A stretch of DNA of 23,139 nt, from NCBI RefSeq assembly GCF_006345805.1, contig NW_021836655.1, positions 1 through 23,139 on the forward strand. The letters are read 5' to 3'. Position 1 is the first letter of the stretch. Every line of letters starts with the position of its first letter. This document shows, in pieces, positions 4,634-21,768 of this stretch. Position numbers and translations under genes: made by a program. The notes under the pieces are model-generated. The model did no database searches. It was not told the origin of the DNA and saw nothing but the letters and a program-made list of their open reading frames with translations. The DNA is from Octopus sinensis. Its lineage: Eukaryota.

Positions 4634-4770
4634 TAATCCAACGGAAAACAGAAAAAACAACACGTGAACAATTAAAGTATTATTATTAGGCGCTCAGGAA
4701 AGAGGGAAGAACGAGGATATTTATATATATGTATGTATGTATGTGTGTGTGTGTGTGTGTGTATGTGTGT

Positions 4771-5228
4771 AGGCGCAGGAGTGGCTGTGTGGTAAGTAGC
4801 TTGTTTACCAACCACATGGTTCCGGGTACAGTCCCACTGCGTGGCATCTTGGGCAAGTGTCTTCTACTATTGCCCCGAGCCGACCAAAGCCCTGTGAGTG
4901 GATTTGTTTGATGGAAACTGAAAGAAGCCCGTCGTATATATTTATATATATATATGAGTGTGTGTGTGTCTGTGTTTGTCCCCCTAGCATTGCTTGACAA
5001 CCTATTTCTTTATTACCCACAAGGGGCTAAACACAGAGGGAACAAACAAGGACAGACATTGCTTGACAACCGATGTTTACGTCCCCGTTACTTAGCGGTT
5101 CGGCAAAACAGACCGATAGAATAAGTACTAGGCTTACAAAAGAAAAAGTCCCGGGATCGGTTGCTCGACTAAAGGCGGTGCTCCAGCTTGGCCGCAGCCA
5201 AATGACTGAAACAAGTAAAAGAGTAAAA

Positions 5229-8780: not shown

Positions 8781-8948
8781 TTTTTTATGAACCCCCCAAC
8801 AGCAACAACAACAACAACAACCCTACGAGGACGAAAGGCAATGTTTGTGCGTGTGTGCAGTTGGAATGTCACTGCAACAACAACAACAACAACAATCTAT
8901 TCTTATTAAACGTTAAAAACTGTCAGATGCAGACTGCACACACGACAC

Positions 8949-8961
8949 TGATGACGACGAC

Positions 8962-8993
<32 letters not shown>

Positions 8994-9172
8994 CGACGAT
9001 GATGATTATGATGATGATGACGATGATGACGACGATGATGACGACGATGATGACGATGATGACGATGATGATGACGATGATGATGATGAATGCGGCGGTG
9101 GTGACGATGATGATGATGATGGTGGTGGCGGCGGCGGTGGTCGTCTGCTGTTTTAGGTTGTTGTTGTTGTTG
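8949..9172 (+). repeat. Compound trinucleotide tract (GAT/GAC)n-(GCG/GTG)n-(GTT)n
   Basis: Seen directly; it is the source of the spurious Met-rich ORF 8855-9202. Confidence 0.9.
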
Positions 9173-9253
9173 GTCGTCTGCCTTTTAATGGAGAATCAAT
9201 GATTATGAAAGTCTCTGCTTTCGGACCAGACATTCCTATATATACATGCATGC

Positions 9254-9303
<50 letters not shown>

Positions 9304-9488: not shown

Positions 9489-9527
<39 letters not shown>

Positions 9528-9831
9528 AACATACATACATATAGCCTTATTTCTATACATACATTCCTAAATAAGTGTGTATATATATATAAACACATGT
9601 ATATATACTGTAAATAAATATACACACACACAAAGAGAGAGTGTTGAGGAATGTTACAACAATAATTGTTAGTGTGTAGAATGCAATGTATGCGATGCCA
9701 GGTTCGATTCCCGGGCGAAGCCATTTACAACAAGCAGAAGAAGAAGAAGATTAATATTTCTAATATTTGAATAAATATTGTCAAATAAAGAAAGCAAAAG
9801 GTTGACGTTCCAGGAATAATTCCAAAAACCA

Positions 9832-12800
9832 TCAGAGAATGTCAAAATCCAAATCCAAAAGAACTTCAAAGACTTCATTATCATCCCATCTCAGGAGTAA
9901 ATATTTTGGATTATCTTTTAATCTCAGGATTTCATCATCTTCAGATGTTTCCTCTTCAATATGTCGAGGTATTTCGTAAATATTGTTTATTGTATCTGTT
10001 ATATAAACACATTCACCAATTATGGTCAGACCAAGTCTTGGAATATAATATCCCAGACCAATAAATATTTCTTTTATTCTTATCCTCCTCACCAAAGACT
10101 TTTCCCTGAACCATTCCACAAAACAAAAAACTTCCCTCCATCCAGACTCCCCCTTTTCATCTCCCTCCTCACAAACAACACATCACCAAAAGATGTGACT
10201 CCCACACCATCCACCCCTTCATGTCCCTCCAACCTTCCCTTTCTCCACATCTTCCCACCACACACTTCATCTTTACATTTCCCATCTTCAAAATCAACCA
10301 CATCCACATAATAAGGGTCAAAGATTTTGGGGTCTTTGCAATAATAGTAATACTTGTTGTTCTCCCATCTTCTTTGGTATTTCTTGTGTCTCTCTTTTTG
10401 AGTTATGTCTCTAATATAATGACCACCACACACGAGTTGATTGTCGTTGTATTTATAAATCCTGTTGTAGTATTTCTCAGTTCTGATGGTTTTTAAATGA
10501 CGGAGATCCCTGTTGAAGACCCTCATTTCTCTCCCAAAGGCGACAATGAAACATTCCTCTGTCCACCGACATATGTCCAGTGCTGGTCGTTGTTGTTGTT
10601 CATGTTGAAGTATGTCCACTGTTGTTGTTGTTGTTGTTCTGATTAATGTGACACTTTCTCGAAATATCAACACACTCACATTCACATCTAACTTAATTAG
10701 TTTACTGTTCCGGCCCCTAATGTCCCTCATATCATAATTAACAGGTTCCTCGAATGCAGGAATGGAAAAAGGGACCATTGCTGTCCTATATGGAAGTCTC
10801 CTCACTGATATTTCATCAATTCCCGAATCATTAATCTCCGCTATGTAATTACCACATCTCACCTTTAATCTACCTTTACCAATTATTTCACCTGAATTAC
10901 CTCTTCTTCTTCCTCCTCCATCTCCATCTCCTCCTCTGTATTCCAATTTATTAATTAATTCATTACTGAATATTTCTTGTTCGTTTCAGATGTAATGGAA
11001 GGGAAACGAAGACCAGAATCAAGATTTAATAACGACACAGATTCCAGAATGTTCACTTGGTCCCCATCAATCTTTATGCAATGACATTCAATCAATTCAT
11101 TATGTACACACCAGTAAATACCCGCCACTTTTCTCCATATTACACCATAAGGGATGAGACTCGACCAAACTTGAGATGTCTTCAAATCTTCTCCATTCAG
11201 TTGAAATATTTCTTTCCTTTTAGGAACCGTGGCCATTATGTGTGATTCTTGTGTAAAACACACACCACCAACTAAACTTGCAACATTTCTGTGACATAGC
11301 AACTGGCAGTCTTCATCGAATATTTTAACATTTCCATTATTGGCTTTTTCACACACAACTGTCTTTCCTTCCTCAGAGACATCAAAATCTTTTACTTGAA
11401 CAGGACATTCGTCTGTTTGTAAACGAGCAACCGGGAAGCTGTCTCGATTCACCATAAACAACCCTTCAACATACAATTCATTCTCTCTTTCCCTCTTCCG
11501 AAGACTTCCAACAAACCTTGGTCCTTTACAGTCTATACTGGAGAAATCTACTTCATCTTTATAAATTCTTTTATTTAAAAATATTCTCTTGTATTCCCCA
11601 TTCTGGGTCAAACACAAAATGTTTTGATATCCAGATGAACCTGAACATTTCTCCCACCGACCATAAATGTACAAAAAACTGTCATCAATTGTCATCCTGT
11701 CAACACCAGAATACCCCATGTAGTGTCTGACTGAATGTAAATATTGACCACCACTGTTGAAGAAAATGATGAATCTCCAGTTGAAGACAATGATGACATC
11801 TTCATCAGTAACTTTAATATCCTGGATTCTATCAGAATAATCTCCATCTTCTCTCAATATTAATGGGTCAGGTATGTTTATTTTTTTTATTTCCTTCACA
11901 CTCGAATTTATTTCATCAATATCAACAAAATGCAAATGTCTTTCATCTCTCCGTTCACTAAAAACCAGTTGATTGTTTGATAAAGAAGCCACACATTCAT
12001 ATGTATTTCTCGTTTTGTAAATTACCAACGACAATGGAAATTCCACTTTTAATGTCAACAGTTGGGGTTTACCATGATCTTCATATCCCAACTCGTAATG
12101 ACCAGTGTGTTTGACTGCCATCGACACATTTTAATATTATAATAAACATTCACTTTGATTGAATCCATAAGGTGACCATCCAATGTGAATATCTTAATGT
12201 TTCCATTCTTCTTGTCACATCCTGCAATCAGATTATTTTCAGTAAGAACCAAAGATCTAATCTCCACTGGTCCTTTGTCTCCCAAATGTTTAGGGAGAGG
12301 AATATGTCTGGCTTTATCAGAAACTGTCAGGTCCTGTAGATATAAGTGGAAGACAACATTTCACTGAGAGAAATGTGTCTGGAAAATACATCCACCAGGT
12401 CGATATAATAATTAAGTTGATTATTAGTAACGAGATCATTAACCAACAAATTCTGATCGTTTATGGCAAACATACGGCTTCTGTCTATCAGATAAACAGA
12501 CGTTTGGTCAATAGATCCACCTTGGAGACTGAGGGGACGTTTCGCTTGGGACATTAAAACACTGGGGACCATCTGACGACCGCCATGACCACCACCACCT
12601 ATTCTAGTGTTGTACTGAAAAGCTTTTCCCCTAGTAACAATTAATAGCTTTTCTGTTTTCTTGTCTATTGATAATGATTTCACAAACACAGGGATATTAA
12701 TTGTCTTAATTACTTCAACTTGATTATAATAATTGATGGCTAAAATGTCTAAATGTGATGGTTTATCACAATAACAAACAATTTCACCTTCACCCATCTT

Positions 12801-15164
12801 ACACACCCGTACATAAGGCTGCCTAAATGATACACTTCTCACTCTCTTTGATAGGTTTCCGATGACCCTTAATTGTTTCCGTAGGGGTAATGTGACCCCT
12901 ATATGATTAGAATCCCATCGACATATATCTGTGGCTGTAGACGGCAGAGATAATCTGGACACAATGTCTCCTTCCTCAGAAATGTAGAACAAGCAATCAT
13001 GATTGATGTCGGACACCACCAACTGTCCATTGGACAGATTACATATTTTGCCAATGACAAGTTTTTGGTCATTCTCCTTTTCTTTGAGTCGTAGATTTAG
13101 ATTTCTGATGTAAGGATTTTTCGTGGGTAAACGACAGCCAGACGACTGGTCTTGATTCTTGTAAAGAAGAACCCTGTTGAGTTGAGTGTCCGGGACATAA
13201 AGAGTTCCTTGGAAAACAGCAATGTGAGGGTGAACAGGGAAAGGCAGTTCCCACTGCCATTTCATTTGTCCATATAGATCGTAACATCTGAGAATAGAGT
13301 GTCTCCTGAAGAGGACATAGAAATAAACATTATCAGAGTAGATGTGATGAGGGTGGCCATAGAATGGAAGGTATTTTTGAAAAAGTTCTTCACCACATGT
13401 GGAATAAAATACCATTTTATTTTCGTTTCCATCTACGACTACAAAATTAATTGGAGTTGCAGCAATGCTGACATTATGATGTCCCAGAGAAATTCTTTCT
13501 GCAATGTCAACTTTATCTTCGTTGATCAAGAGGATATGGACCTCGCTTTTGTTTCCACCTGTGGTTAGAGCTAAACACTTATTTGATACAAGATGACATA
13601 GTTTAATGTAATCAGTATGGACTTTCATTAAAGGGCCTTTCATTAGCCCAGGGCATGTGATACACTGAAATTCTTTGTTTTCATAGTAAAACACCAGAAA
13701 TCCTTTAGAATTTATTCTACACAAGCAAGAAGGAATCTCAGGGAAAGTTGAATTACTTTGGTTAATTATTTCTCTAGTCTCAGTGAATAATATAGCTTTA
13801 TTATTCCTGTAGAATATTAATATAGAAGATGTAGACATAGGTAGAATATTAGTAACGTTGTAGCAATCCTCAATATAAATATAGTTGTTCAATGTTGGTG
13901 TCCATAGCTGGGGGTTATATGACTGCCTGGGCCAAAAGTCTTCATTTGTTCCAATGATATGAAGGACATCAAAATAATCGGTTACAAAAATGTTTTCTTT
14001 GCCAACTGAAATATGGCGGCATTTCATGCCAATTTCTCTTGTTGTCACAGCACCTGTACCTGATATCCGATAAATAATATGTCCCTGAAGGACATAAAAA
14101 TGGTTTTGGTACACAGAGATGTGGCTTGGAATGTCCAGGGAATTGGTATCCACCACAAATAACTGCTGGCCATCCACATTGTAACAGGTAACCCTGTTAA
14201 TATTGGAAAAGGATACTAAGAGTTTATTTTGTGCTCCTACAGCAATATCTGAAGGTGTTTCTTTCGTTATGAATTCGTATTTTATTCTATTCTCTTCCCA
14301 GTCAATGACGTATATGGTCCGACCAAACATTTCTACACCTATAAGCGTAGAATGTTCCAAATAAGAAACCAAGATTAATCCTAGCTGAATTCTTTTGATT
14401 TTAAAACTTAAAGGGTTGATAATAAGAATCATCCTTCGAAATGGGAGGGTGGCCAGGACTGTGTCTTGACTGATTCTAGTAAAATCAGTGACGGAAGATG
14501 AGCAATGAACTTCATTTCTGTTGCCGTCTCTTGTTATACAACATATTGTCATACAGTGGCGGGAATATGTTACAATACCCCCTTGCATGACGACAATATT
14601 GGATATTGGGTTGCTTAAGTCTTCACCAGATTCTTCAATCTCTACTTCTCTGGTCACAACTGGCCGAAGGGGACGAAATTTTGTGATTACTTTTGGTGGT
14701 TCAATGGTCTTGTGGTTGTATGGGTTACAGGTGACATAAAAGTCAAAGAATCTTTGTTGAAACCAATCAAGGTTTTGGTGAACAAAATCATTATTTTGTT
14801 TTGCAAATTCCAGAAATCTTGGCATTTTACGTTTGATATTACGTAAAATTCGAGATCCATTTAAACCCAGAGAGTCCATGTGATTACATTTATCCTTTAC
14901 ATAATCTATAAACGTATTGATGTGGTCTGTTTTGATTAGTGTTCGGTAACATGTCACAATATGAAGGAAACTTGGTAACATGGACTTTTCCTGTTCTTTA
15001 GATTTCTTTGTGTCTTTTCTTTCCTGTTCTTCTGTTTTCTTTGTGTTTTGTGTGTGTAATATTTGGGTAAGAATTGGTGTAGTTTCCTTATAAATTGCTG
15101 TTGTATCACAGACTGTGGCAGGAATGAGAGCCAACATTTTGTTTTCTTCATTAATCTTCTCCAT
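9832..15164 (-). CDS. Reconstructed giant single-exon coding block, ~1,778 aa, about six tandem NHL-like beta-propeller units (molluscan TRIM/NHL-like propeller family); interrupted in this sequence by four 1-nt deletions
   Basis: The track ORFs of 945, 76, 390, 285 and 95 aa abut or overlap, each in the -1 frame of the one before. 5333 nt + 4 restored nt = 5337 nt = 1779 codons including the stop. A blade motif recurs about six times at roughly 200-290 aa spacing (VTDFTRISQDTVLATLP, PSCLCRINSKGFLVFY, ATDICRWDSNHIGVTLP, IKMCRWQSNTLVITS, VGGVCFTQESHIMATVP, ALDICRWTEECFIVAF). No SINE interrupts the block. The family assignment comes from motif recognition, not a search. Confidence 0.75.
10089..10946 (-). 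CDS. 285 aa open segment: linker and most of propeller unit 6 of the same protein
   Basis: The frame is open upstream to about 10986 (NEQEIFSNELINKLEYRGG). It contains DICRWTEECFIVAF and GVGVTSFGDV blades and continues by a -1 shift into the 95 aa ORF ending at 9832. Confidence 0.7.
   Translation of the reverse strand: MEYRGGDGDGGGRRRGNSGEIIGKGRLKVRCGNYIAEINDSGIDEISVRRLPYRTAMVPFSIPAFEEPVNYDMRDIRGRNSKLIKLDVNVSVLIFRESVTLIRTTTTTTVDILQHEQQQRPALDICRWTEECFIVAFGREMRVFNRDLRHLKTIRTEKYYNRIYKYNDNQLVCGGHYIRDITQKERHKKYQRRWENNKYYYYCKDPKIFDPYYVDVVDFEDGKCKDEVCGGKMWRKGRLEGHEGVDGVGVTSFGDVLFVRREMKRGSLDGGKFFVLWNGSGKSLW
10955..12127 (-). CDS. 390 aa open segment: most of propeller unit 4 and unit 5 of the same protein
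   Basis: NHL-like blades such as VKDFDVSEEGKTVVCEKANNGNVKIFDEDC. It joins the 76 aa ORF (12055-12285) by a -1 shift at about 12088. The listed start is probably not a real initiation site. Confidence 0.75.
   Translation of the reverse strand: MSMAVKHTGHYELGYEDHGKPQLLTLKVEFPLSLVIYKTRNTYECVASLSNNQLVFSERRDERHLHFVDIDEINSSVKEIKKINIPDPLILREDGDYSDRIQDIKVTDEDVIIVFNWRFIIFFNSGGQYLHSVRHYMGYSGVDRMTIDDSFLYIYGRWEKCSGSSGYQNILCLTQNGEYKRIFLNKRIYKDEVDFSSIDCKGPRFVGSLRKRERENELYVEGLFMVNRDSFPVARLQTDECPVQVKDFDVSEEGKTVVCEKANNGNVKIFDEDCQLLCHRNVASLVGGVCFTQESHIMATVPKRKEIFQLNGEDLKTSQVWSSLIPYGVIWRKVAGIYWCVHNELIECHCIKIDGDQVNILESVSLLNLDSGLRFPSITSETNKKYSVMN
12327..15164 (-). CDS. 945 aa open segment: N-terminal region plus propeller units 1-3 of the multi-propeller protein
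   Basis: 945 stop-free codons in AT-rich DNA. NHL-like blades such as KICNLSNGQLVVSDINHDCLFYISEEG and PSDIAVGAQNKLLVSFSNINRVTCYNVDG. The true frame probably leaves this ORF at about 12360 (SLSE|NVVFHLYLQDL). Confidence 0.85.
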   Translation of the reverse strand: MEKINEENKMLALIPATVCDTTAIYKETTPILTQILHTQNTKKTEEQERKDTKKSKEQEKSMLPSFLHIVTCYRTLIKTDHINTFIDYVKDKCNHMDSLGLNGSRILRNIKRKMPRFLEFAKQNNDFVHQNLDWFQQRFFDFYVTCNPYNHKTIEPPKVITKFRPLRPVVTREVEIEESGEDLSNPISNIVVMQGGIVTYSRHCMTICCITRDGNRNEVHCSSSVTDFTRISQDTVLATLPFRRMILIINPLSFKIKRIQLGLILVSYLEHSTLIGVEMFGRTIYVIDWEENRIKYEFITKETPSDIAVGAQNKLLVSFSNINRVTCYNVDGQQLFVVDTNSLDIPSHISVYQNHFYVLQGHIIYRISGTGAVTTREIGMKCRHISVGKENIFVTDYFDVLHIIGTNEDFWPRQSYNPQLWTPTLNNYIYIEDCYNVTNILPMSTSSILIFYRNNKAILFTETREIINQSNSTFPEIPSCLCRINSKGFLVFYYENKEFQCITCPGLMKGPLMKVHTDYIKLCHLVSNKCLALTTGGNKSEVHILLINEDKVDIAERISLGHHNVSIAATPINFVVVDGNENKMVFYSTCGEELFQKYLPFYGHPHHIYSDNVYFYVLFRRHSILRCYDLYGQMKWQWELPFPVHPHIAVFQGTLYVPDTQLNRVLLYKNQDQSSGCRLPTKNPYIRNLNLRLKEKENDQKLVIGKICNLSNGQLVVSDINHDCLFYISEEGDIVSRLSLPSTATDICRWDSNHIGVTLPLRKQLRVIGNLSKRVRSVSFRQPYVRVCKMGEGEIVCYCDKPSHLDILAINYYNQVEVIKTINIPVFVKSLSIDKKTEKLLIVTRGKAFQYNTRIGGGGHGGRQMVPSVLMSQAKRPLSLQGGSIDQTSVYLIDRSRMFAINDQNLLVNDLVTNNQLNYYIDLVDVFSRHISLSEMLSSTYIYRT

Positions 15165-15966
15165 TTTATGAATATAGAATTATTATCTTTTTCTGTTAAT
15201 ATATTCTTTTTTGTGGATTTTGTTTTCTTCCTTTGGAATACAATTTATCTCTTCAAAATTCACTAATTTTTACATGAAAGCTGAAATAAAATGAAAACTT
15301 TATTAGTTTTGTGAAAAGCTTTTGATAAAATAATATTTACGATTCATCAAAGAATTTCAAGGAAAACACACATTTCATTAAATACATTAAACAAATTGTT
15401 TATTTGACAGTGAAGTTAAACATTTAACTGTTTTCAATGGAATAATCATTAGAAATAAACTTGAAGATATAATACACCATTATCTTTATTGACTGAATAT
15501 AAGTGATCGTGAAAATTTTTGTAGTAAGAAGGATATAAATATTTTATTGAGGTTATTTCTACAGATATTATCGGTAGAAATTATAGCCAGGACTGATTTC
15601 CTGCTACAACATTTCTATCGAAATGTCAGACAGAAACAAACAAAGAGATCAAAGAGAAAAACATCTGTTGTTTGTTCTCATTGTTTATCTCATTGTTTGT
15701 TTACATCTGACATCTCCATAGGAAAGGTTTAGCAAAAATCAGAGCCAACTATAATTCTATGGAATATCAATAGAATAATGTGAAAATACTGCTAACAAAG
15801 TAGAATGTGGTGTTGACTTCTAAAACGATTTAATATATTTTACAGGATTTATGGTTGCATAATGAAATACCACGTCCCTACAAATCAGAATATAAGTATT
15901 ATTAATAATCATATGCACTGGAAATGATGTGACAGTCATGGTTGGCTTGGTTTCCATCATATTTAC

Positions 15967-16165
15967 CTGGATTCACAGATACCAATAAAGCTGGAGATGA
16001 AACTGTTCTTAACCTGACAAATGCTGTAAATCTCTCGACATTTCAATATAATCCACACAATTATCATACACAACATTGATTAACTCAGAAGCTTATCCAA
16101 AGATGGGCTTTCATATATAATCACATTGATAGACAGCATGTTGAGAGGATCGTTATATTTGTTTG
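15967..16165 (-). CDS. Candidate upstream exon C (NKYNDPLNMLSINVIIYESPSLDKLL|ELINVVYDNCVDYIE...); needs one or two 1-nt restorations
   Basis: Acceptor ctcaatcacag| in phase 1. Two possible donors: tcag|gttaag (16014; 152+1 nt) or ccag|gtaaat (15967; 199+2 nt), both phase 1 after repair. As read, there is an in-frame TAA. Confidence 0.25.
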
Positions 16166-16629
16166 CTGTGATTGAGATCATAAAGATGGTTAATGAATAA
16201 GCCCAATTAATGAAAGGTAGGTTCATCTTAATTATCTTTAATTTCAGGACAATGTTTGGGTAGCAATGAGAAAGATGTGTTTGTATGAAAATGGTTTTGC
16301 AGGTGAAGTGTGTTTTGTTTTGTGTTAGGTGAGGAGTTATAACTTGGTAGTTTATTATGAAGTATTGTGGGGGTTTAATGAGGTGGATTAGAAAATATTG
16401 GTGAGGGTTTTAATGACATTCTGGTGACCCATCATTATCAGAATGATCCTCCACCCCTCCTTGGTCTATGAAATAATAACTGTTACTCTATACCCCAGGA
16501 GGAATGAAAAATAAAAGAGGACCTTCTTCAGGATCCACATACATATATGTATATATGATAGAATGAATGTGTATAATATATACACAAGGATGCACATATG
16601 TATATTTATACATCCATACGTCTGTATGT

Positions 16630-16860
16630 ATGTATGATGTCATCATCTTTTACTCCCACTTTCCATGCTGGATGGTTGGATGGTTCAAAGAATATCTTGC
16701 CTGAAGTTACATTTTCTGGTTTCCTGTCTGCAGCTGGATGCTCTTCCTGACACCAACCACTGCACAATGTGCACTGGGTGCATCTTATGGCACCATCGCT
16801 AGAGACAATCGCCATGACCTTGACAAAACTAAAGGTTCCCCTCAATCTCTGGGTTTCACA
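16630..16860 (-). mobile_element. Interspersed repeat family C copy
   Basis: CATCATC...TTTCCATGCTGGATGGTTGGATGG...GCTGGATGCTCTTCCTGACACCAACCAC. Confidence 0.6.
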
Positions 16861-17152
16861 TATACCTTGGAATGTGTGAGAGATCTAGGGTAATAAAATA
16901 TAAAAGGAGTGGCTGAGTGTTGGGGAGAGACTCAGGTAGGTCCCGTACATCCCTAGTTTCATTGGAAGAATGGTGAAGAGAAAGATTTACTGCCATCTTT
17001 GTCACAGCAGTAAGATAGTAGAGTAAAAGAAGAAGAGGAGAGTGATTGAGAGATGAAAGATAGAGGTAGGGGTGATAGGGGCGTGACAGTAGGCACTCAA
17101 GGTCCGAGAGTTGACACTCATCAAACTGGTTTTTGGAGGTCTGGGAATATAC

Positions 17153-17284
17153 CTCCAAAGACCAGTTTGATAAATGCTATTATAACGAAACTTTCGGATC
17201 TTGGGTCACTTGTTACTTCTGCTAAATATTTATATATTATATCAAAATCAGAATCCAAGTCGATCAACATCATGGAAATTGTAG
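17153..17284 (-). CDS. Candidate upstream coding exon B (132 nt, symmetric phase 1-1; TISMMLIDLDSDFDIIYKYLAEVTSDPRSESFVIIAFIKLVFG)
   Basis: Acceptor ggtatcacag|, donor tttggag|gtatat. The length is divisible by 3, the frame is stop-free, and the phase matches exon A. Confidence 0.35.
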
Positions 17285-17324
17285 CTGTGATACCAGTGCC
17301 GGTGGTACGTAAAAGAACCATCCA

Positions 17325-17605
17325 AACGTGACCGTTGCCAGCGCCGCCCGACTGGCCTTCGTGCTGGTAGCACATAAAAAGCACCATCCGATCATGGCCA
17401 TTGCCAGCATCGCCTGGCCCCCGTGTCTGGTGGCACATAAAAAGTACCCACTACACTCATGGAGTGGTTGGCGTTAGGAAGGGCATCCAGCCATAGAAAC
17501 TTTGCCAGATCAGAACTGGGCCTGGTGCAGCATCAGGCCTCCCACACCCCATTTGAACCGTCCAACCCATGCTAGCATGGAAAGCGGATGGTAATGATGA
17601 TGAGA
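17325..17605 (+). mobile_element. Interspersed repeat family C copy
   Basis: GTGGCACATAAAAAGTACCCACTACACTC...GGCGTTAGGAAGGGCATCCAGC...CCAACCCATGCTAGCATGGAAAGCGGA followed by a GAT tail. Confidence 0.7.
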
Positions 17606-18373
17606 TATATTATATATATATGTATATATATACATATATATACCTTCACACACCCATTGTACAAATATCTGTGTCTATGTATGTTTATAGCTATGAATCA
17701 ATGAATGACAAAAGAACAAGAGTTACATAGCCACCTTCATTAGACTTCCAGCTGTTTCTGCTACAGGAAGCAGTGAACTCGAGCTGAGTGTGTGTGCGCG
17801 TAGGTGTCTGTGCATTTGTTTATGTTTGCAATCTTTTTAAGTTGCTCCAAGCAGAAACATCTGTCAACCAATCACCCCCACCTTGGAAGACATGGGAAAT
17901 AAGAACTTTTGTTCTTGCAAAATGGTTTTGGGTGAGCAATAGGAAGGCTGTCTGTCTGTAAAACAAGGCTACAATAATATATTCACCTAACCCATGCTAG
18001 CACACAAAGTCAGAAGTGCAAACAAACATAAGTAAACCCATGTTTATACATTCATATACTTTTATGCATACATAAACACATACACACGTGTGTGTGTGTG
18101 CATCTGATGTTAAGAAGATCATCCAGCTGTAGAAATCTTGCCAAATCTTTCATTAGAGCTCAGCAATGTCCTCTGGTTCACTGCTTCCTCGTCAACTGTC
18201 CTACCCATGCCAGTTAGGGAAAATGGATGTCAAAACCTTTATAATACATCAGATGATGTATTTTCTTTTTTGTATTTTCCCTCTCATAATTTTGTTTTGT
18301 TTCTTGCCAGGTTCTTGTGAGTCCCACTCAGTCAAGTCTATGACTACACTCGATGAGGCTTACCAATCCTCAC

Positions 18374-18453
18374 CTGGTTTCAAGCAAGAGAATATTTCCC
18401 CAAGTTCTTCCAACATGAACAGCACAATGGTTGGATATGTTTTCTGGTGAACA
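18374..18453 (-). CDS. Candidate upstream coding exon A (80 nt; VHQKTYPTIVLFMLEELGEIFSCLKP)
   Basis: Acceptor tcgtttgtttgcag|, donor ccag|gtgagg, an open frame ending in phase 1, unique sequence between repeats. Confidence 0.35.
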
Positions 18454-18654
18454 CTGCAAACAAACGACACTGTTTGTTGTGACGTGACATTTGTTTATAA
18501 TTCGCAGCAGATGTCAAGACAAGGAGACGTGAGCAGACATATGCACACACAAACACACACACACACACAACACATTCACATACAAGTACAAATGTAGATA
18601 TGCATACATGAATATACACACACATGTATATACCATAGGATTTATCAGTTCCAT

Positions 18655-18790
18655 GTACGAAACCCATTCATAAGGCTTTAGTCAACCTGGAACATTAGAA
18701 GAAGTTAATTCTTTAAGGTGCTGCAAAGTGGGACTGAACCTGAGACCACAAGGTTCTGAAGTGAATTTCTTAACCATACAGCCATGCCCC
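18655..18790 (-). mobile_element. SINE family A, diverged 5' fragment
   Basis: CATAAGGCTTTAGTCAACC...GTGGGACTGAACC...CCATACAGCCATGCC resembles the head at 3183-3333. Confidence 0.55.
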
Positions 18791-18827
18791 CACTTTTTTT
18801 TGGTAATATTCTGAAGATAATAATAAT

Positions 18828-19408
18828 CCTTTCTACTATAGGCATAAGGCCTGAAATTTTGGGTGTGGGGGGTTAATTGATTACATCACCCCCCAGCCCC
18901 TAACTGGTTCTTATTTTATCAATCCCAAAAGGACGAGGGGCAAAATCAACCTTGGTGGAATTTGAACTCAAAATGTAAACTTGGAAGAAATGATGCAAAG
19001 TATTTTGTCTGGCATTTTGTAACAATTCTGCTTGTTCATCACATTAATAATAATAATAATAATAAGAAGAAGAAGAATATCAATAACTATAACAATAACA
19101 ACATCAATAATAATAATATTAGCAGCAGCAGCAAAAACAACAACAACAACAGCAATGATTTCTTTTATGTTTTATTTAATATAATAAAAATGATTTCAAG
19201 TTTTGGCACAAGGCCAGCAAGTTCAAGGAAGGGGCCAGTCTATTACACTGACCCCAGTACTCAACTAGTACTTAATTTATCGATCCGAAAAGGATCCGAA
19301 AAGGTGGAATTTGAACTCAGAATGTAAAGATGGACAAAATGCCGCTCAACCTTTTGCTTTGCATCCTCACAATTCTGCCACCACGTCACAGTAATTATAA
19401 TAATAATG

Positions 19409-19445
<37 letters not shown>

Positions 19446-19897
19446 TAATAATAATGATAATAATAATAAGAAGAAGAATAAGAATAAGAATAAGGAGAAG
19501 AATACTTTCTTACTATAGGCACAAGGCCTGAAATTTGGGGTGAGGGGACTAGTAAATTACATTGCCTCCAGTGCATAACTGGAACTTATTGAATCGACCC
19601 CAAAAGGATGAAAGGCAAAGTTGACCTTGGTGGAATTTGAACTCAGAATGTAGTGGCATATGAGTTGTAATAATAATAATAATAATAATAATGGCTTCAA
19701 ATTTTAACAGAAGGCCAGCTTGTTCTGGAGAGCAGGTAAATTGATTACATCGACCCCAGAACACAAAAGGTACTTATTTTATTGACCCCCCGAAAGGAAC
19801 AGGTTGATGTCCGGCAAAATTTGAACTCAGAACATAAAGGCAAACATAGCTGCCTAGCATTTTGCCCAGCATGCTAACGATTCTGCCAGCTCACCAC
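18828..19897 (-). mobile_element. Cluster of four head-to-tail SINE family B copies separated by (AAT)n tracts
   Basis: Copies at about 18828-19040, 19195-19385, 19500-19655 and 19693-19897. Each carries TTTGAACTCA(G/A)AA and is preceded on the plus strand by an AAT-type run. Confidence 0.75.
19395..19500 (+). repeat. (AAT)n grading into (AAG/AAT)n microsatellite
   Basis: Seen directly. Confidence 0.9.
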
Positions 19898-20005
19898 CCA
19901 AATAGTAGTAATAGTAATTAATAATAGTAATAGTAATTAATAATAATGATAACACCCTTCCTTTCCTATTTTATATCCTTCATATGTCCTTCTCTTCTTT
20001 TACTT

Positions 20006-20039
<34 letters not shown>

Positions 20040-20164
20040 CCCTCTCTCTCCTTTCAATATCACTTCAACATTTTATTTCCCTTTTACATAAACATGTATA
20101 TATTATGTGTGTTTGTGTGTATTTATATAGTGTACGTGTATATATGTATATATATCTTTTTATA

Positions 20165-20350
20165 TTCTTATACTTGTTTCAGTCATTTGACTGTGGCCAT
20201 ACTGGAGCACTGCCTTTAGTCAAACAAATTGACCCCAGACTTATTCTTTGTAAGCCTAGTACTTATTCTATTGGTGTCTTTTTGCTGAACTTTAAGTTAC
20301 AGGGATGTAACACCCACATCGGTTGGTCAAGCAATGTTAGTGGGACAAAA
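20165..20350 (-). mobile_element. SINE family A, 3' portion
   Basis: CTTGTTTCAGTCATTTGACTGTGGCCATACTGGAGCAC...GTAAGCCTAGTACTTATTCTAT matches 5580-5700. Confidence 0.75.
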
Positions 20351-20665
20351 ATAAAGACACAATTACGTACCTATTTGATTTCTTAGCTTATATTCTGTAA
20401 AATTGATTTAGAAATTTTGAATTTTCCATGCAAATAAAATCTAAAACTTTTTGTCATTAAAAATAATTTACATTTTCTTTCTCTTTCTTTAGAATTCATC
20501 AAATATTTTTGAAATGTTCAAAAAATATAAACTTTCTCTTCTTGTAAAAGTATTTGAAATCCTGGACACATTTTTTATAGTTTTAAAATGGTAGGAGGAA
20601 ATTAGCACAAACGTGAAGAGTGTGTGTATATATGTATGTATACAGTGTGTATCTCTCTCTCTCTC

Positions 20666-20706
<41 letters not shown>

Positions 20707-21768
20707 CTTTCCATCATTTAATCATTAGTACTTACTGTTTAATTAAAATATTAACTCCATTTCCTAATTTAGCTGATCCACAAATAGATTCGGTTAAAAT
20801 ATTTACCGGACTTAAAAAGAATGGCTGGTGCTAATACAATCAGTTAAATACATAAAAGCAATGCTCCAGCACGGCCGTGGTTCAATAAACTAAAGGAGTA
20901 AAACACATCAGCCACACATTACATTCATAACTTGAAATCTTTCTACCACCACGACCACCACCATTTAGTCTGTTAACCTATCTCTATAAATGACACACCC
21001 TCTCTTCAATTATTATTCATGTCTTTCTCATCCACAAATCTACACTTAAAAAAAAACCATCACTATTCTATTCCTCAACCAAGCTGATAATTCCACAGAA
21101 ATCTCCAAGAATATTTCTAAATTTACCAAATTATAACATAGACTATTCCTTCAAATACAATATTTAAATATAATTTATAAAAATATATCAAAACTATAAT
21201 CTCTTTTAATTTAATAGGATGTTTAACTTTTATAATGTCAGAATACAATTTATGAAGTTGAAATATTAAAATTATTTTTATAAACATTACATTTGAAATG
21301 TAACAAATATATTTGTTTAAAATAAATTAAAATTATGGCTTCTGTTGTTGATGTTTAACTAAAAATCAATTCTTATCTAATCACCCTATGGTCAGACCCC
21401 ACCCATAAGTTGTTATCATCTAACATGTTTTTAGGGGTTTTTTTGAGACTTTGTTCTTGGTTTTGTAGCAGAGTTTATAATAAATGCAGACAATATGAAG
21501 TAATTCTCAGAAGCAATCCATCTGATAAATAATATTGAAGATGGTGAGAAAACATATTTAATGCATTGCACATTAAAATGTGCTGAGAGAGAAAATATAT
21601 GTTTGTCACCAAATTGTTTAATATTTAAACAATTCTTTTTGTTTGCTTCAAGATAAAAATAGAAATGAAATCACCAGAACAATTCCATTTATATACAAAG
21701 TTTAATATTAAAATCAAATCAGTTAAAAAAATATATTTCATTGATTGAAAGAAGAAAAAGATCAATTA

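What the first reader, a model, noticed from the sequence alone, without database searches (positions are those of the whole stretch)
9832..15164. Hidden ~1,778 aa single-exon protein built from about six tandem NHL-like beta-propellers
Seen: five track ORFs join into one 5.3 kb intronless frame. A CRW/CRI-type blade motif recurs about six times, and unit starts resemble each other (NPISNIVVMQGGIV, KICNLSNGQLVVSD, EIRSLVLTENNLIAGCD, VKDFDVSEEGKTVVCE). Known: molluscs have expanded families of B-box/coiled-coil proteins that typically carry one NHL-like six-bladed propeller, and NHL propellers act as protein- or RNA-binding platforms. Inference: a six-propeller concatemer of highly diverged units in one giant exon is an unusual architecture. 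It may be a lineage-specific multivalent binding or immune-recognition scaffold that automated annotation would fragment.
Basis: partly seen in the sequence, partly recalled or inferred. Interest (0 to 1): 0.8.

Follow-up and report, generated by a model that had tools for sequence, protein, structure and literature searches.

The report
Broken copy of octopus six-propeller gene
The window holds a frame-shifted, probably dead copy of an undescribed octopus-only gene family whose intact members are single-exon proteins of about 1,800 residues, built from a helical head and about six NHL-like beta-propellers, two of which vary strongly between recent copies.

Summary
Five minus-strand ORFs (15164..9832) are collinear pieces of one ~1,800-codon gene, and the internal repeat is real (profile self-alignment E 1e-15).

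There are six units of ~230-290 aa. Unit 2, modelled with a unit-level alignment, folds confidently (pLDDT 86.7) as a six-bladed propeller. Its nearest solved folds are TRIM2/3/71, Thin and Brat NHL domains. Units 1, 3, 4 and 6 align across all six blades. Unit 5 is short and doubtful.

The gene is not merely hidden; it is broken. Against an intact 1,802-codon paralogue (L008, 94.8% DNA identity), the window copy carries seven frame-breaking indels of 1 to 5 bp and has lost the family stop codon. Its lineage-specific substitutions look neutral, so it is most likely a young pseudogene. Assembly error is not excluded.

The family was found only in Octopoda (three Octopus species and Argonauta hians). 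It has no Pfam domain and no RING or B-box. It is annotated only as 'uncharacterized', and I found no paper on it. Conserved single-copy members (omega 0.39) coexist with a duplicating cluster on one small chromosome.

In the recent copies, propellers 4 and 6 carry hypervariable patches with dN/dS above 1. This suggests a recognition role but does not prove one.

The parts
9778..15164 (-). Whole gene remnant: a decayed copy of a ~1,800-codon single-exon gene of an octopod-specific family
   Evidence: The conceptual translation (X placed at each junction) aligns end to end with intact family proteins of 1,662-1,925 aa at 31-52% identity, and with close paralogues at 75-91%. tblastn matches it collinearly to the intact 1,802-codon ORF of L008.
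12327..15164 (-). Still-open 945-codon ORF (ATG at 15164, stop at 12329-12327). It covers the N-terminal region, U1, U2 and most of U3. The last six codons and the stop are out of frame, created by the first frameshift.
14640..15164 (-). N-terminal ~175-residue region, predicted helical. It has no zinc-finger pattern and no signal peptide.
   Evidence: AF2 secondary structure shows helices at 45-98, 103-123 and 127-145, at low confidence. Pfam finds nothing significant.
13869..14639 (-). Propeller unit U1 (residues 176-432), the most constrained unit
   Evidence: Unit alignment covers 19 of 23 U2 strands. Omega is 0.04-0.33 in all pairs.
13077..13868 (-). Propeller unit U2 (residues 433-696), modelled as a six-bladed beta-propeller
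   Evidence: AF2 with unit-level alignment A2: pLDDT 86.7, pTM 0.83, 23 strands. Foldseek top hits are the NHL domains of TRIM2, TRIM71, TRIM3, Thin and Brat, with TM 0.62-0.68.
12280..13076 (-). Propeller unit U3 (residues 697-962). It has the strongest NHL-like blade motif (ICNLSNGQLVVSD...ICRWDSNHIGVTLP) and is interrupted by frameshift 1.
12346..12346 (-). Frameshift 1: one T missing (TTT>TT) relative to all paralogues
11420..12279 (-). Propeller unit U4 (residues 963-1248). It is hypervariable among recent paralogues and out of frame in this copy.
   Evidence: Unit alignment covers 20 of 23 strands. Omega is 1.2-2.5 among the six close paralogues. Hypervariable patches and in-frame indels are shown.
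12082..12083 (-). Frameshift 2: two extra bases relative to L008, inside a variable loop
10731..11419 (-). Unit U5 (residues 1249-1478). It is short: blades 1-3 are clear, and the rest is divergent or low-complexity (GGDGDGGGRRRG).
   Evidence: 12-15 of 23 strands align in all family members.
10977..10977 (-). Frameshift 3: one G missing (GG>G)
9778..10730 (-). Propeller unit U6 plus the C-terminal tail. Its second half is hypervariable. In this copy it carries four of the seven frame-breaking indels.
10159..10159 (-). Frameshift 4: one base missing relative to L008, in a variable patch. The other paralogues differ here by -4 or +5.
9809..9844 (-). A 4-bp deletion at 9844 and a 1-bp insertion at 9809.
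9778..9787 (-). A 5-bp deletion (scored as 2 + 5 bp against the other paralogues) that destroys the family's ...FYFDK-TAA terminus
15165..21768 (.). Upstream flank duplicated together with the gene. It is part of a block of at least 12.4 kb that is 94.5% identical to the L008 locus.

Best explanation
Window 15164-9778 (minus strand) is a recently inactivated paralogue of an octopod-restricted gene family.

Intact members are single-coding-exon proteins of about 1,660-1,925 residues. They have no signal peptide and so are presumably intracellular. Each has a ~175-residue helical N-terminal region followed by six tandem units of ~230-290 residues. Five of the units are six-bladed NHL-like beta-propellers. 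The fifth unit in order is shorter and may be incomplete.

The family has slowly evolving single-copy members on large chromosomes, and a cluster of young segmental duplicates on one small chromosome (O. vulgaris OX597841.1, 29 Mb) that evolves by birth and death. The window copy belongs to that cluster. It keeps an open 945-codon 5' part, but downstream it has seven frame-breaking indels and has lost its stop codon.

Inferred, not shown: the intact proteins act as multivalent binding scaffolds. Propellers 4 and 6 would carry hypervariable surface loops that diversify between paralogues to recognise varied ligands (protein or RNA), as in rapidly evolving innate-immune or restriction-type families. 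Propeller 1 and the helical head would provide conserved functions such as assembly or signalling.
For: Broken frame:
- Five overlapping open segments lie in successive frames.
- Seven frame-breaking indels separate the window from the intact 1,802-codon ORF of L008, which is 94.8% identical in DNA. The same sites appear against three other paralogues.

Neutral drift in this copy:
- Window-specific singleton substitutions are 5 synonymous to 22 non-synonymous (omega about 1).
- The intact L008 lineage shows 10 to 7 in codons 1-939 (omega 0.19).

A real gene family:
- P0048, P0067 and P0074 are uninterrupted single ORFs of 1,674-1,718 codons.
- The O. vulgaris / O. bimaculoides orthologue pair has dS 0.099, dN 0.039 and omega 0.39.

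Architecture:
- Profile self-alignment gives E 1e-15 and 2e-12, and a six-unit alignment was built.
- The U2 AF2 model has pLDDT 86.7 and 23 strands.
- Foldseek top hits are NHL domains.
- The unit profile hits Brat (3.9e-6), TRIM3 (8.8e-6), Mei-P26 (3.2e-5) and Thin (9.8e-5), and hits designed and PQQ-like propellers more strongly.

Lineage restriction:
- All hits in the 5.8-billion and 1.84-billion protein searches that carry a name are from Octopus or Argonauta.

Birth and death:
- Duplicated blocks of 12 kb or more share their flanks.
- Of the close copies examined, only L008 is intact.

Diversification:
- Omega exceeds 1 in U4 and U6 among the six close paralogues. Several pairs have nominal p of 0.004-0.02.
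- Omega in U1 is 0.04-0.3.
- Hypervariable patches with in-frame indels are visible in the alignment.
Against: - Three of the seven indels are 1-bp changes in short homopolymers (TTT>TT, GG>G, A>AA). Nearly every close paralogue in the public O. vulgaris assembly also has one or two frameshifts. Consensus errors in near-identical duplicates could therefore explain part of the damage. I could not inspect reads, and I do not know which assembly the window comes from.
- The neutral-drift signal rests on 27 substitutions. Its difference from L008 is not statistically significant.
- Only one of the six units was modelled. The 945-residue model was poor (pLDDT 37.7).
- dN/dS was computed with pairwise Nei-Gojobori counts on non-independent pairs, some of them pseudogenes, with evident gene-conversion mosaicism. 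There was no site-model test and no multiple-testing correction.
- There is no expression, localisation or ligand evidence. The recognition/immune function is inference by analogy.
Confidence: 0.62

Rival explanations
1. The locus is an intact, functional ~1,800-codon gene, and the frameshifts are assembly or polishing errors in a family of near-identical paralogues.
For: - Three indels are single bases in short homopolymers.
- L001, L002, L009a, L009b and L004 also carry one or two frameshifts each. Such a uniformly high rate would be unusual for real lesions in copies that otherwise look constrained (omega about 0.4 in the 5' half).
Against: - Four lesions are multi-base (+2, -4, -5, and -4/+5 in variable patches), and the stop codon is deleted.
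- The public O. vulgaris assembly yields perfectly open 5.0-5.4 kb ORFs for L005, L006 and L008.
- Window-specific substitutions are at the neutral ratio.
Confidence: 0.17
2. The copy is truncated but alive. It would express the 945-residue product (helical head plus propellers 1-3) as a shortened family member.
For: - The ORF has kept its start codon and 945 open codons.
- It differs from L002 with omega 0.41 over this part.
- Similar truncated models are annotated in O. vulgaris, for example P0002 at 913 aa.
Against: - The omega of 0.41 is mostly inherited from the shared history with intact ancestors.
- The few window-specific changes in codons 1-939 are 1 synonymous to 6 non-synonymous.
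- The ORF ends inside propeller 3, which would leave an unclosed propeller.
- There are no expression data.
Confidence: 0.15
3. The ORF belongs to a transposable element or other selfish repeat, which would explain the many copies and frequent decay.
For: There are dozens of copies and fragments, many of them broken, with shared flanks.
Against: - No transposase, integrase, RT or other mobile-element domain appears in any member.
- The duplicated blocks differ in extent (7 kb to more than 12 kb, and patchy over about 20 kb) rather than sharing sharp common ends.
- Single-copy members on large chromosomes are conserved among three Octopus species with omega 0.39.
- The expanded copies sit mainly on one small chromosome.
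Confidence: 0.03
4. The five ORFs are exons separated by short introns, not frameshifted pieces.
For: The source is a eukaryotic genome, and some public gene models of paralogues contain 'introns'.
Against: - Successive open segments overlap by 28-91 bp.
- The intact paralogue L008 is collinear base for base, and the window differs from it only by 1-5 bp indels at the junctions.
- The 'intron' in model P0007 removes about 206 codons from an ORF that is open throughout.
Confidence: 0.01

Closest known systems
TRIM-NHL proteins (Brat, Mei-P26, Thin, LIN-41/TRIM71, TRIM2, TRIM3)
   Same: - The U2 model is a six-bladed propeller whose best structural matches are their NHL domains (TM 0.62-0.68).
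- The unit profile hits their sequences at E 4e-6 to 1e-4.
- A helical region precedes the propellers.
- Both are intracellular proteins without a signal peptide.
   Different: - No RING, B-box or filamin domain is present.
- There are six tandem propeller units instead of one.
- No Pfam NHL hit reaches threshold.
- Sequence identity to NHL domains is 13-15%.
- The family is restricted to Octopoda.
Multi-propeller receptors of the LDL-receptor family (LRP1, LRP2, LRP4, LRP5/6), with four to eight YWTD six-bladed propellers
   Same: Both have a tandem array of several six-bladed propellers in one chain acting as a multivalent ligand-binding platform. This comparison rests on my own knowledge, not on a test here.
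   Different: The LRP proteins are secreted or transmembrane, their propellers are separated by EGF modules, and they carry the YWTD motif. Here there is no signal peptide, no EGF or LDL-A module and no Pfam Ldl_recept_b hit.
PQQ-like / BamB-type and designed symmetric propellers (Bagel, Scone, Cake, Pizza)
   Same: They give the strongest sequence-profile hits of the unit profile: Bagel8 at 1.9e-14 and the PQQ-like 3hxj at 2.7e-12, summed over several blades. Pizza6 is among the top structural hits.
   Different: Most of these are eight-bladed, bacterial or artificial. The hits reflect blade-level similarity, not a shared domain architecture.
Rapidly diversifying, tandemly duplicated innate-immune recognition families (for example TRIM5/TRIM22 and fish finTRIM B30.2 loops)
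   Same: Shared features are clustered young duplicates, frequent pseudogenes, hypervariable patches with in-frame indels, and dN/dS above 1 confined to particular domains. The comparison itself is from my own knowledge.
   Different: The variable domain has a different fold (propeller, not B30.2). No E3 ligase module is present, and no functional or expression link to immunity is shown.

Membership tests
TRIM-NHL (RING / B-box / coiled-coil / NHL) | N-terminal RING finger | tested here: not met
   No RING hit in the window pieces, in the N-terminal 175 residues or in five intact family members. The first 175 residues contain only four cysteines (read from the translation).
TRIM-NHL (RING / B-box / coiled-coil / NHL) | B-box zinc finger | tested here: not met
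   No B-box hit in any member.
TRIM-NHL (RING / B-box / coiled-coil / NHL) | Coiled-coil region before the C-terminal domain | tested here: inconclusive
   Long helices at residues 45-98, 103-123 and 127-145 appear in a low-confidence model (pLDDT 50-62). No coiled-coil predictor was run.
TRIM-NHL (RING / B-box / coiled-coil / NHL) | One C-terminal six-bladed NHL propeller | tested here: not met
   The fold is present, but as about six tandem units rather than one.
Pfam NHL repeat (PF01436) | Repeat score at or above the gathering threshold (20 bits) | tested here: not met
   No NHL hit in the window pieces. The best in the family is P0053 at 18.5 bits, E 0.002.
NHL-type six-bladed beta-propeller fold | Six four-stranded blades forming a closed propeller, with nearest structural neighbours being NHL domains | tested here: met
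   Shown for U2 only. AF2 gives pLDDT 86.7, pTM 0.83 and 23 strands. Foldseek ranks 1-5, 7-8 and 11-12 are the NHL domains of TRIM2, TRIM71, TRIM3 and Thin. U1, U3, U4 and U6 are inferred by alignment over 17-23 of the 23 strands. U5 is doubtful.
Octopod-specific ~1,700-1,900-aa family (e.g. LOC106880634, LOC115216371, LOC106873529; unnamed) | End-to-end collinear homology with full-length members | tested here: met
   The conceptual translation aligns over 1,600-1,690 columns with P0048, P0053, P0050, P0047 and P0074 at 31-52% identity. It aligns collinearly with the L008 ORF at 90% amino-acid identity.
Octopod-specific ~1,700-1,900-aa family (e.g. LOC106880634, LOC115216371, LOC106873529; unnamed) | Uninterrupted single coding exon from ATG to the ...FYFDK stop | tested here: not met
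   Seven frame-breaking indels are present and the stop codon is deleted in the window copy.
LDL-receptor-type YWTD multi-propeller proteins | Signal peptide, EGF and LDL-A modules, YWTD (Ldl_recept_b) repeats | tested here: not met
   No such Pfam hits in any member. The N-termini are charged and not signal-like (sequences).
Transposable-element protein | Transposase, integrase or RT domain, and constant element termini | tested here: not met
   No such domains are found. The extents of the duplicated blocks vary.

The most novel reading that the evidence does not exclude
The intact members form an octopod-invented family of intracellular, multivalent recognition receptors. A conserved helical head and propeller 1 would be coupled to propellers 4 and 6, whose surface loops are diversified between paralogues by positive selection, in-frame indels and gene conversion. 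The cluster on the small chromosome would be a birth-and-death 'repertoire' locus, for example for antiviral or RNA/protein non-self recognition. The window would be one of its dead members.
Probability: 0.25. Interest if true: 0.75.

Novelty: new variant of a known kind. Interest (0 to 1): 0.5.

Why it matters
- Cephalopod genomes are known for a few large lineage-specific expansions. This looks like another one that has gone unnoticed, because Pfam sees no domain in it and annotation pipelines break it into fragments and chimeras.
- A chain of about six NHL-like propellers without an E3 module is an unusual architecture for this fold.
- The pattern found here is the usual signature of recognition or conflict genes: conserved single-copy members, a fast-duplicating cluster, frequent pseudogenes, and two hypervariable propellers. 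If confirmed, it would give octopus immunology or RNA biology a concrete candidate family.
- For the window itself the practical message is more modest. The locus should be annotated as a probable pseudogene of this family, not as five separate genes or as an intact giant protein.

Tried and rejected
- Pfam on the five pieces, on five intact members and on the N-terminal region found nothing above threshold.
- A PDB sequence search with the single 945-aa piece gave no hit even at E 10.
- AF2 on the 945-aa piece with a 16-sequence family alignment gave pLDDT 37.7, which is unusable, so I did not run a fold search on it.
- An exact look-up of the 945-aa product found nothing on record, so the source assembly of the window remains unknown.
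- A word-indexed search with the unit profile for non-octopod relatives returned only Octopus fragments. The exhaustive profile search gave one unnamed borderline hit (P0065, E 9.7e-4) with no Pfam domain, which I did not pursue.
- Literature searches by topic and by locus or accession names found no paper on the family.
- tRNA, Rfam and Pfam scans of the rest of the window found nothing.
- The intron reading and the transposon reading were considered and rejected (see rival explanations).
- My first unit boundaries put the start of U5 about 14 residues too late, which produced spurious non-matches for U5. I corrected this.
Full report
**1. What is in the window**

On the minus strand, the ORF listing and a three-frame scan show five open segments: 15179-12330, 12360-12058, 12130-10958, 10985-10092 and 10182-9835. 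Each overlaps the next by 28-91 bp. They lie in frames 2, 1, 0, 2, 1, so every junction shifts the frame in the same direction.

The first segment contains an ATG at 15164 and 945 open codons. At about 37% G+C, roughly 6.8% of random codons are stops, so such an ORF is not a chance event (about 1e-29 by my own arithmetic). But the pieces do not form one frame as the sequence stands.

**2. It is a member of a gene family, and an intact near-twin exists**

- A search of 5.8 billion proteins with the 945-aa piece gave 30 hits, all from Octopus vulgaris, O. sinensis or O. bimaculoides. All are 'uncharacterized' or 'hypothetical', run up to 1,652 aa, and many lie on one 29.19-Mb O. vulgaris chromosome, OX597841.1. 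A search with the third piece gave 17 more, again all Octopus and mostly fragments.
- An exhaustive HMMER profile search of 1.84 billion cluster representatives found only 26 proteins. All that carry names are Octopus or Argonauta hians.
- Among them are intact full-length proteins conserved across species on large chromosomes: P0048, P0066 and P0067 (1,674-1,680 aa in three Octopus species), P0053 and P0070 (1,662 and 1,674 aa), P0047 (1,712 aa), P0074 (1,718 aa), and P0050 and P0068 of Argonauta (1,913 and 1,925 aa).
- P0048, P0067 and P0074 are each encoded by one uninterrupted ORF.
- The locus of model P0007 (L008) contains an open 1,802-codon ORF, MEKINEENK...FAFFYFDK*. It is 94.8% identical in DNA to the window gene and 94.5% identical over 12.4 kb including 6.6 kb of upstream flank.
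- The window's conceptual translation (X placed at each junction, used for analysis only) aligns end to end with all of these proteins.

**3. The window copy is broken**

Relative to L008 the window carries seven frame-breaking indels:

| Position | Change | Context |
|---|---|---|
| 12346 | -1 | TTT>TT |
| 12082 | +2 | variable loop |
| 10977 | -1 | GG>G |
| 10159 | -1 | variable patch |
| 9844 | -4 | |
| 9809 | +1 | A>AA |
| 9783 | -5 | removes the family's TAA stop |

There are also four in-frame indels. The same lesions appear against three further paralogues.

Substitutions unique to the window lineage are 5 synonymous to 22 non-synonymous, which is the neutral expectation. The intact L008 lineage shows 10 to 7 in codons 1-939, omega 0.19. 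These numbers are small.

I conclude that the copy is most likely a young pseudogene. Assembly error is a real alternative for the three homopolymer single-base events, and perhaps more. L001, L002, L009a, L009b (O. vulgaris) and L004 (O. sinensis) also each carry one or two frameshifts. Against that, the same public assembly gives perfectly open ORFs for L005, L006 and L008. I could not inspect reads, and the exact product is not on record, so the source assembly is unknown.

**4. Architecture**

- Profile self-alignment of a 23-sequence family alignment gives strong off-diagonal matches: residues 216-1058 against 469-1353 (E 1.3e-15), 693-1736 against 176-1190 (E 1.9e-12), and 712-811 against 1486-1626 (E 1.7e-6).
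- This defines six units: U1 176-432, U2 433-696, U3 697-962, U4 963-1248, U5 1249-1478, and U6 from 1479 to the end. The units align with one another.
It is C-R-[WI] in U2, U3, U4 and U6 and is degenerate in U1 and U5.
- Pfam finds nothing above threshold in the window pieces or in five intact members. The best is a sub-threshold NHL repeat in P0053, at 18.5 bits against a cut-off of 20.
- AF2 on the whole 945-aa piece with a shallow family alignment failed (pLDDT 37.7). It indicates only a helical region up to about residue 145 and an all-beta remainder.
- Treating the six units of nine diverse members as homologues of one another gave a 30-row alignment at 12-67% identity (A2). With it, AF2 models window U2 with pLDDT 86.7 and pTM 0.83. 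The model has 23 strands in six blades and a disordered 23-residue linker.
- Foldseek against the PDB ranks the NHL domains of TRIM2, TRIM71, TRIM3, Thin, Lin41 and Brat and the NHL-derived design Pizza6 at or near the top (TM 0.62-0.68, 13-17% identity). WD40 and BamB propellers come lower in TM-score.
- The unit profile also hits PDB sequences: designed and PQQ-like propellers most strongly, then Brat (3.9e-6), TRIM3 (8.8e-6), Mei-P26 (3.2e-5) and Thin (9.8e-5).
- Mapping the 23 strands of U2 onto the other units shows 17-23 strands covered in U1, U3, U4 and U6 in five diverse members, but only 12-15 in U5, whose blades 4-5 are weak.

'About six NHL-like propellers' is therefore right in outline. 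It is demonstrated for one unit, inferred by homology for four, and doubtful for one.

There is no RING, B-box, EGF or LDL-A module, transposase or signal peptide (N-termini).

**5. How the family evolves**

- The O. vulgaris / O. bimaculoides orthologues P0048 and P0067 are 91.6% identical in protein, with dS 0.099, dN 0.039 and omega 0.39. This is a real, moderately constrained and fairly fast-evolving gene.
- The copies close to the window are segmental duplicates sharing flanks over 7 kb to more than 12 kb, with patchy homology over about 20 kb. They lie between 6.4 and 22 Mb of OX597841.1.
- Synonymous divergence between two given copies varies several-fold along the gene. For L001 against L002, pS is up to 0.6 in codons 360-420 and about 0.03 elsewhere. 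This indicates gene conversion or recombination.
- Among six close O. vulgaris copies, U1 has omega 0.04-0.33 in every pair. U4 has omega 1.2-2.5 and U6 has 1.0-4.0, with nominal one-sided p of 0.004-0.02 in several pairs. Comparisons with more distant copies give 0.6-0.8.
- The amino-acid alignment shows short hypervariable patches, up to five or six states among six copies and often with in-frame indels, between invariant strand-like stretches.
- These are pairwise counts on non-independent and partly decayed sequences, so I treat diversifying selection as suggested, not established.

**6. Mechanism**

Shown or strongly supported: this is a broken member of a coding family with a helical head plus tandem NHL-like propellers. 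The family is restricted to octopods, with conserved singletons and a birth-and-death cluster.

Inferred: the proteins are intracellular multivalent binding platforms. NHL propellers of TRIM-NHL proteins bind RNA or proteins on one face (established knowledge). Here the variable loops of propellers 4 and 6 would provide paralogue-specific recognition, and the constrained propeller 1 and head would provide common functions. The genomic behaviour resembles that of innate-immune or conflict gene families. I have no expression or ligand evidence.

**7. Comparison with what is known, and novelty**

The fold class is known (NHL-type six-bladed propeller). The protein is not a TRIM-NHL member, because RING and B-box were tested and are absent and it has six propellers instead of one. 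It is not an LRP-type multi-propeller receptor either.

The family is present in the databases only as uncharacterized models, many of them fragments or chimeras. P0002 (913 aa) and an 857-aa model split one gene. P0007 splices about 206 codons out of an open ORF. P0056 and P0079 fuse a C2H2 zinc-finger gene to a family fragment. P0059 fuses an ankyrin-RING MIB2-like gene to one.

Four literature searches found no description.

I rate the family as a new variant of a known kind. The window locus itself is a probable pseudogene of that family.

**8. Verdict**

Interest is 0.5. This is a neat, undescribed octopod family with an unusual architecture and a suggestive evolutionary signature, but it was reached through a dead copy and has no functional data.

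Noticed in passing
window 8949-9121: A (TGA)n microsatellite of about 58 copies creates an artefactual Met/Thr-rich 115-aa ORF at 8855-9202. Several AT/TA dinucleotide arrays flank the gene (9255-9299, 9491-9523).
   Followed up: no
window 4764-5005 and 20162-20362: Two short (~200-240 bp) elements recur in several paralogous loci, in both orientations and at non-syntenic positions. Examples are L001 3861-4061 and 17524-17747, and L002 1683-1900, 1857-2058 and 21150-21352. They look like interspersed (SINE-like) repeats.
   Followed up: partly
window 17311-17448: A 66-bp tandem repeat (2.1 copies, 77% match) lies in the shared upstream flank. Overlapping ORFs at 16856-17438 have no Pfam hit.
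   Followed up: partly
window 9491-21768 vs L008 3346-15696: The duplicated block shared with the intact paralogue is at least 12.4 kb at 94.5% identity. It extends 6.6 kb upstream of the ATG, so the presumed promoter region was copied with the gene.
   Followed up: partly
L001 20448-21804: The last ~500 bp of the gene and its 3' flank (window 9491-10017) occur as about three consecutive partial copies downstream of the second family gene in L001. A further copy lies at L001 15769-16258.
   Followed up: no
L008 10001-15409 (OX597841.1): The public gene model P0007 (1,596 aa) removes about 206 codons as an 'intron' from an ORF that is open for all 1,802 codons. P0008 and P0005 similarly skip internal stretches. 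The full-length proteins of this subfamily are therefore absent from the protein databases.
   Followed up: yes
proteins P0056, P0079 and P0059 (O. vulgaris models): These are chimeric gene models. In P0056 and P0079, C2H2 zinc-finger arrays are fused to a family fragment. In P0059, an ankyrin + RING (MIB2-like) N-terminus is fused to the stretch spanning the end of the helical head and the start of U1. They are probably annotation fusions with neighbouring genes, but a natural RING fusion would be interesting.
   Followed up: partly
codons ~240-520 of L001 vs L002 (window 14444-13600): Synonymous divergence between these two paralogues jumps from about 0.03-0.1 to 0.2-0.6 in this block and then falls back. 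This is a mosaic pattern, as expected from gene conversion between cluster members.
   Followed up: partly
L001, L002, L004, L009 (two copies): Almost every close paralogue examined carries one or two frameshifts of its own, at different sites. Whether this reflects a very high pseudogene fraction or consensus errors in near-identical duplicates is unexplained.
   Followed up: partly
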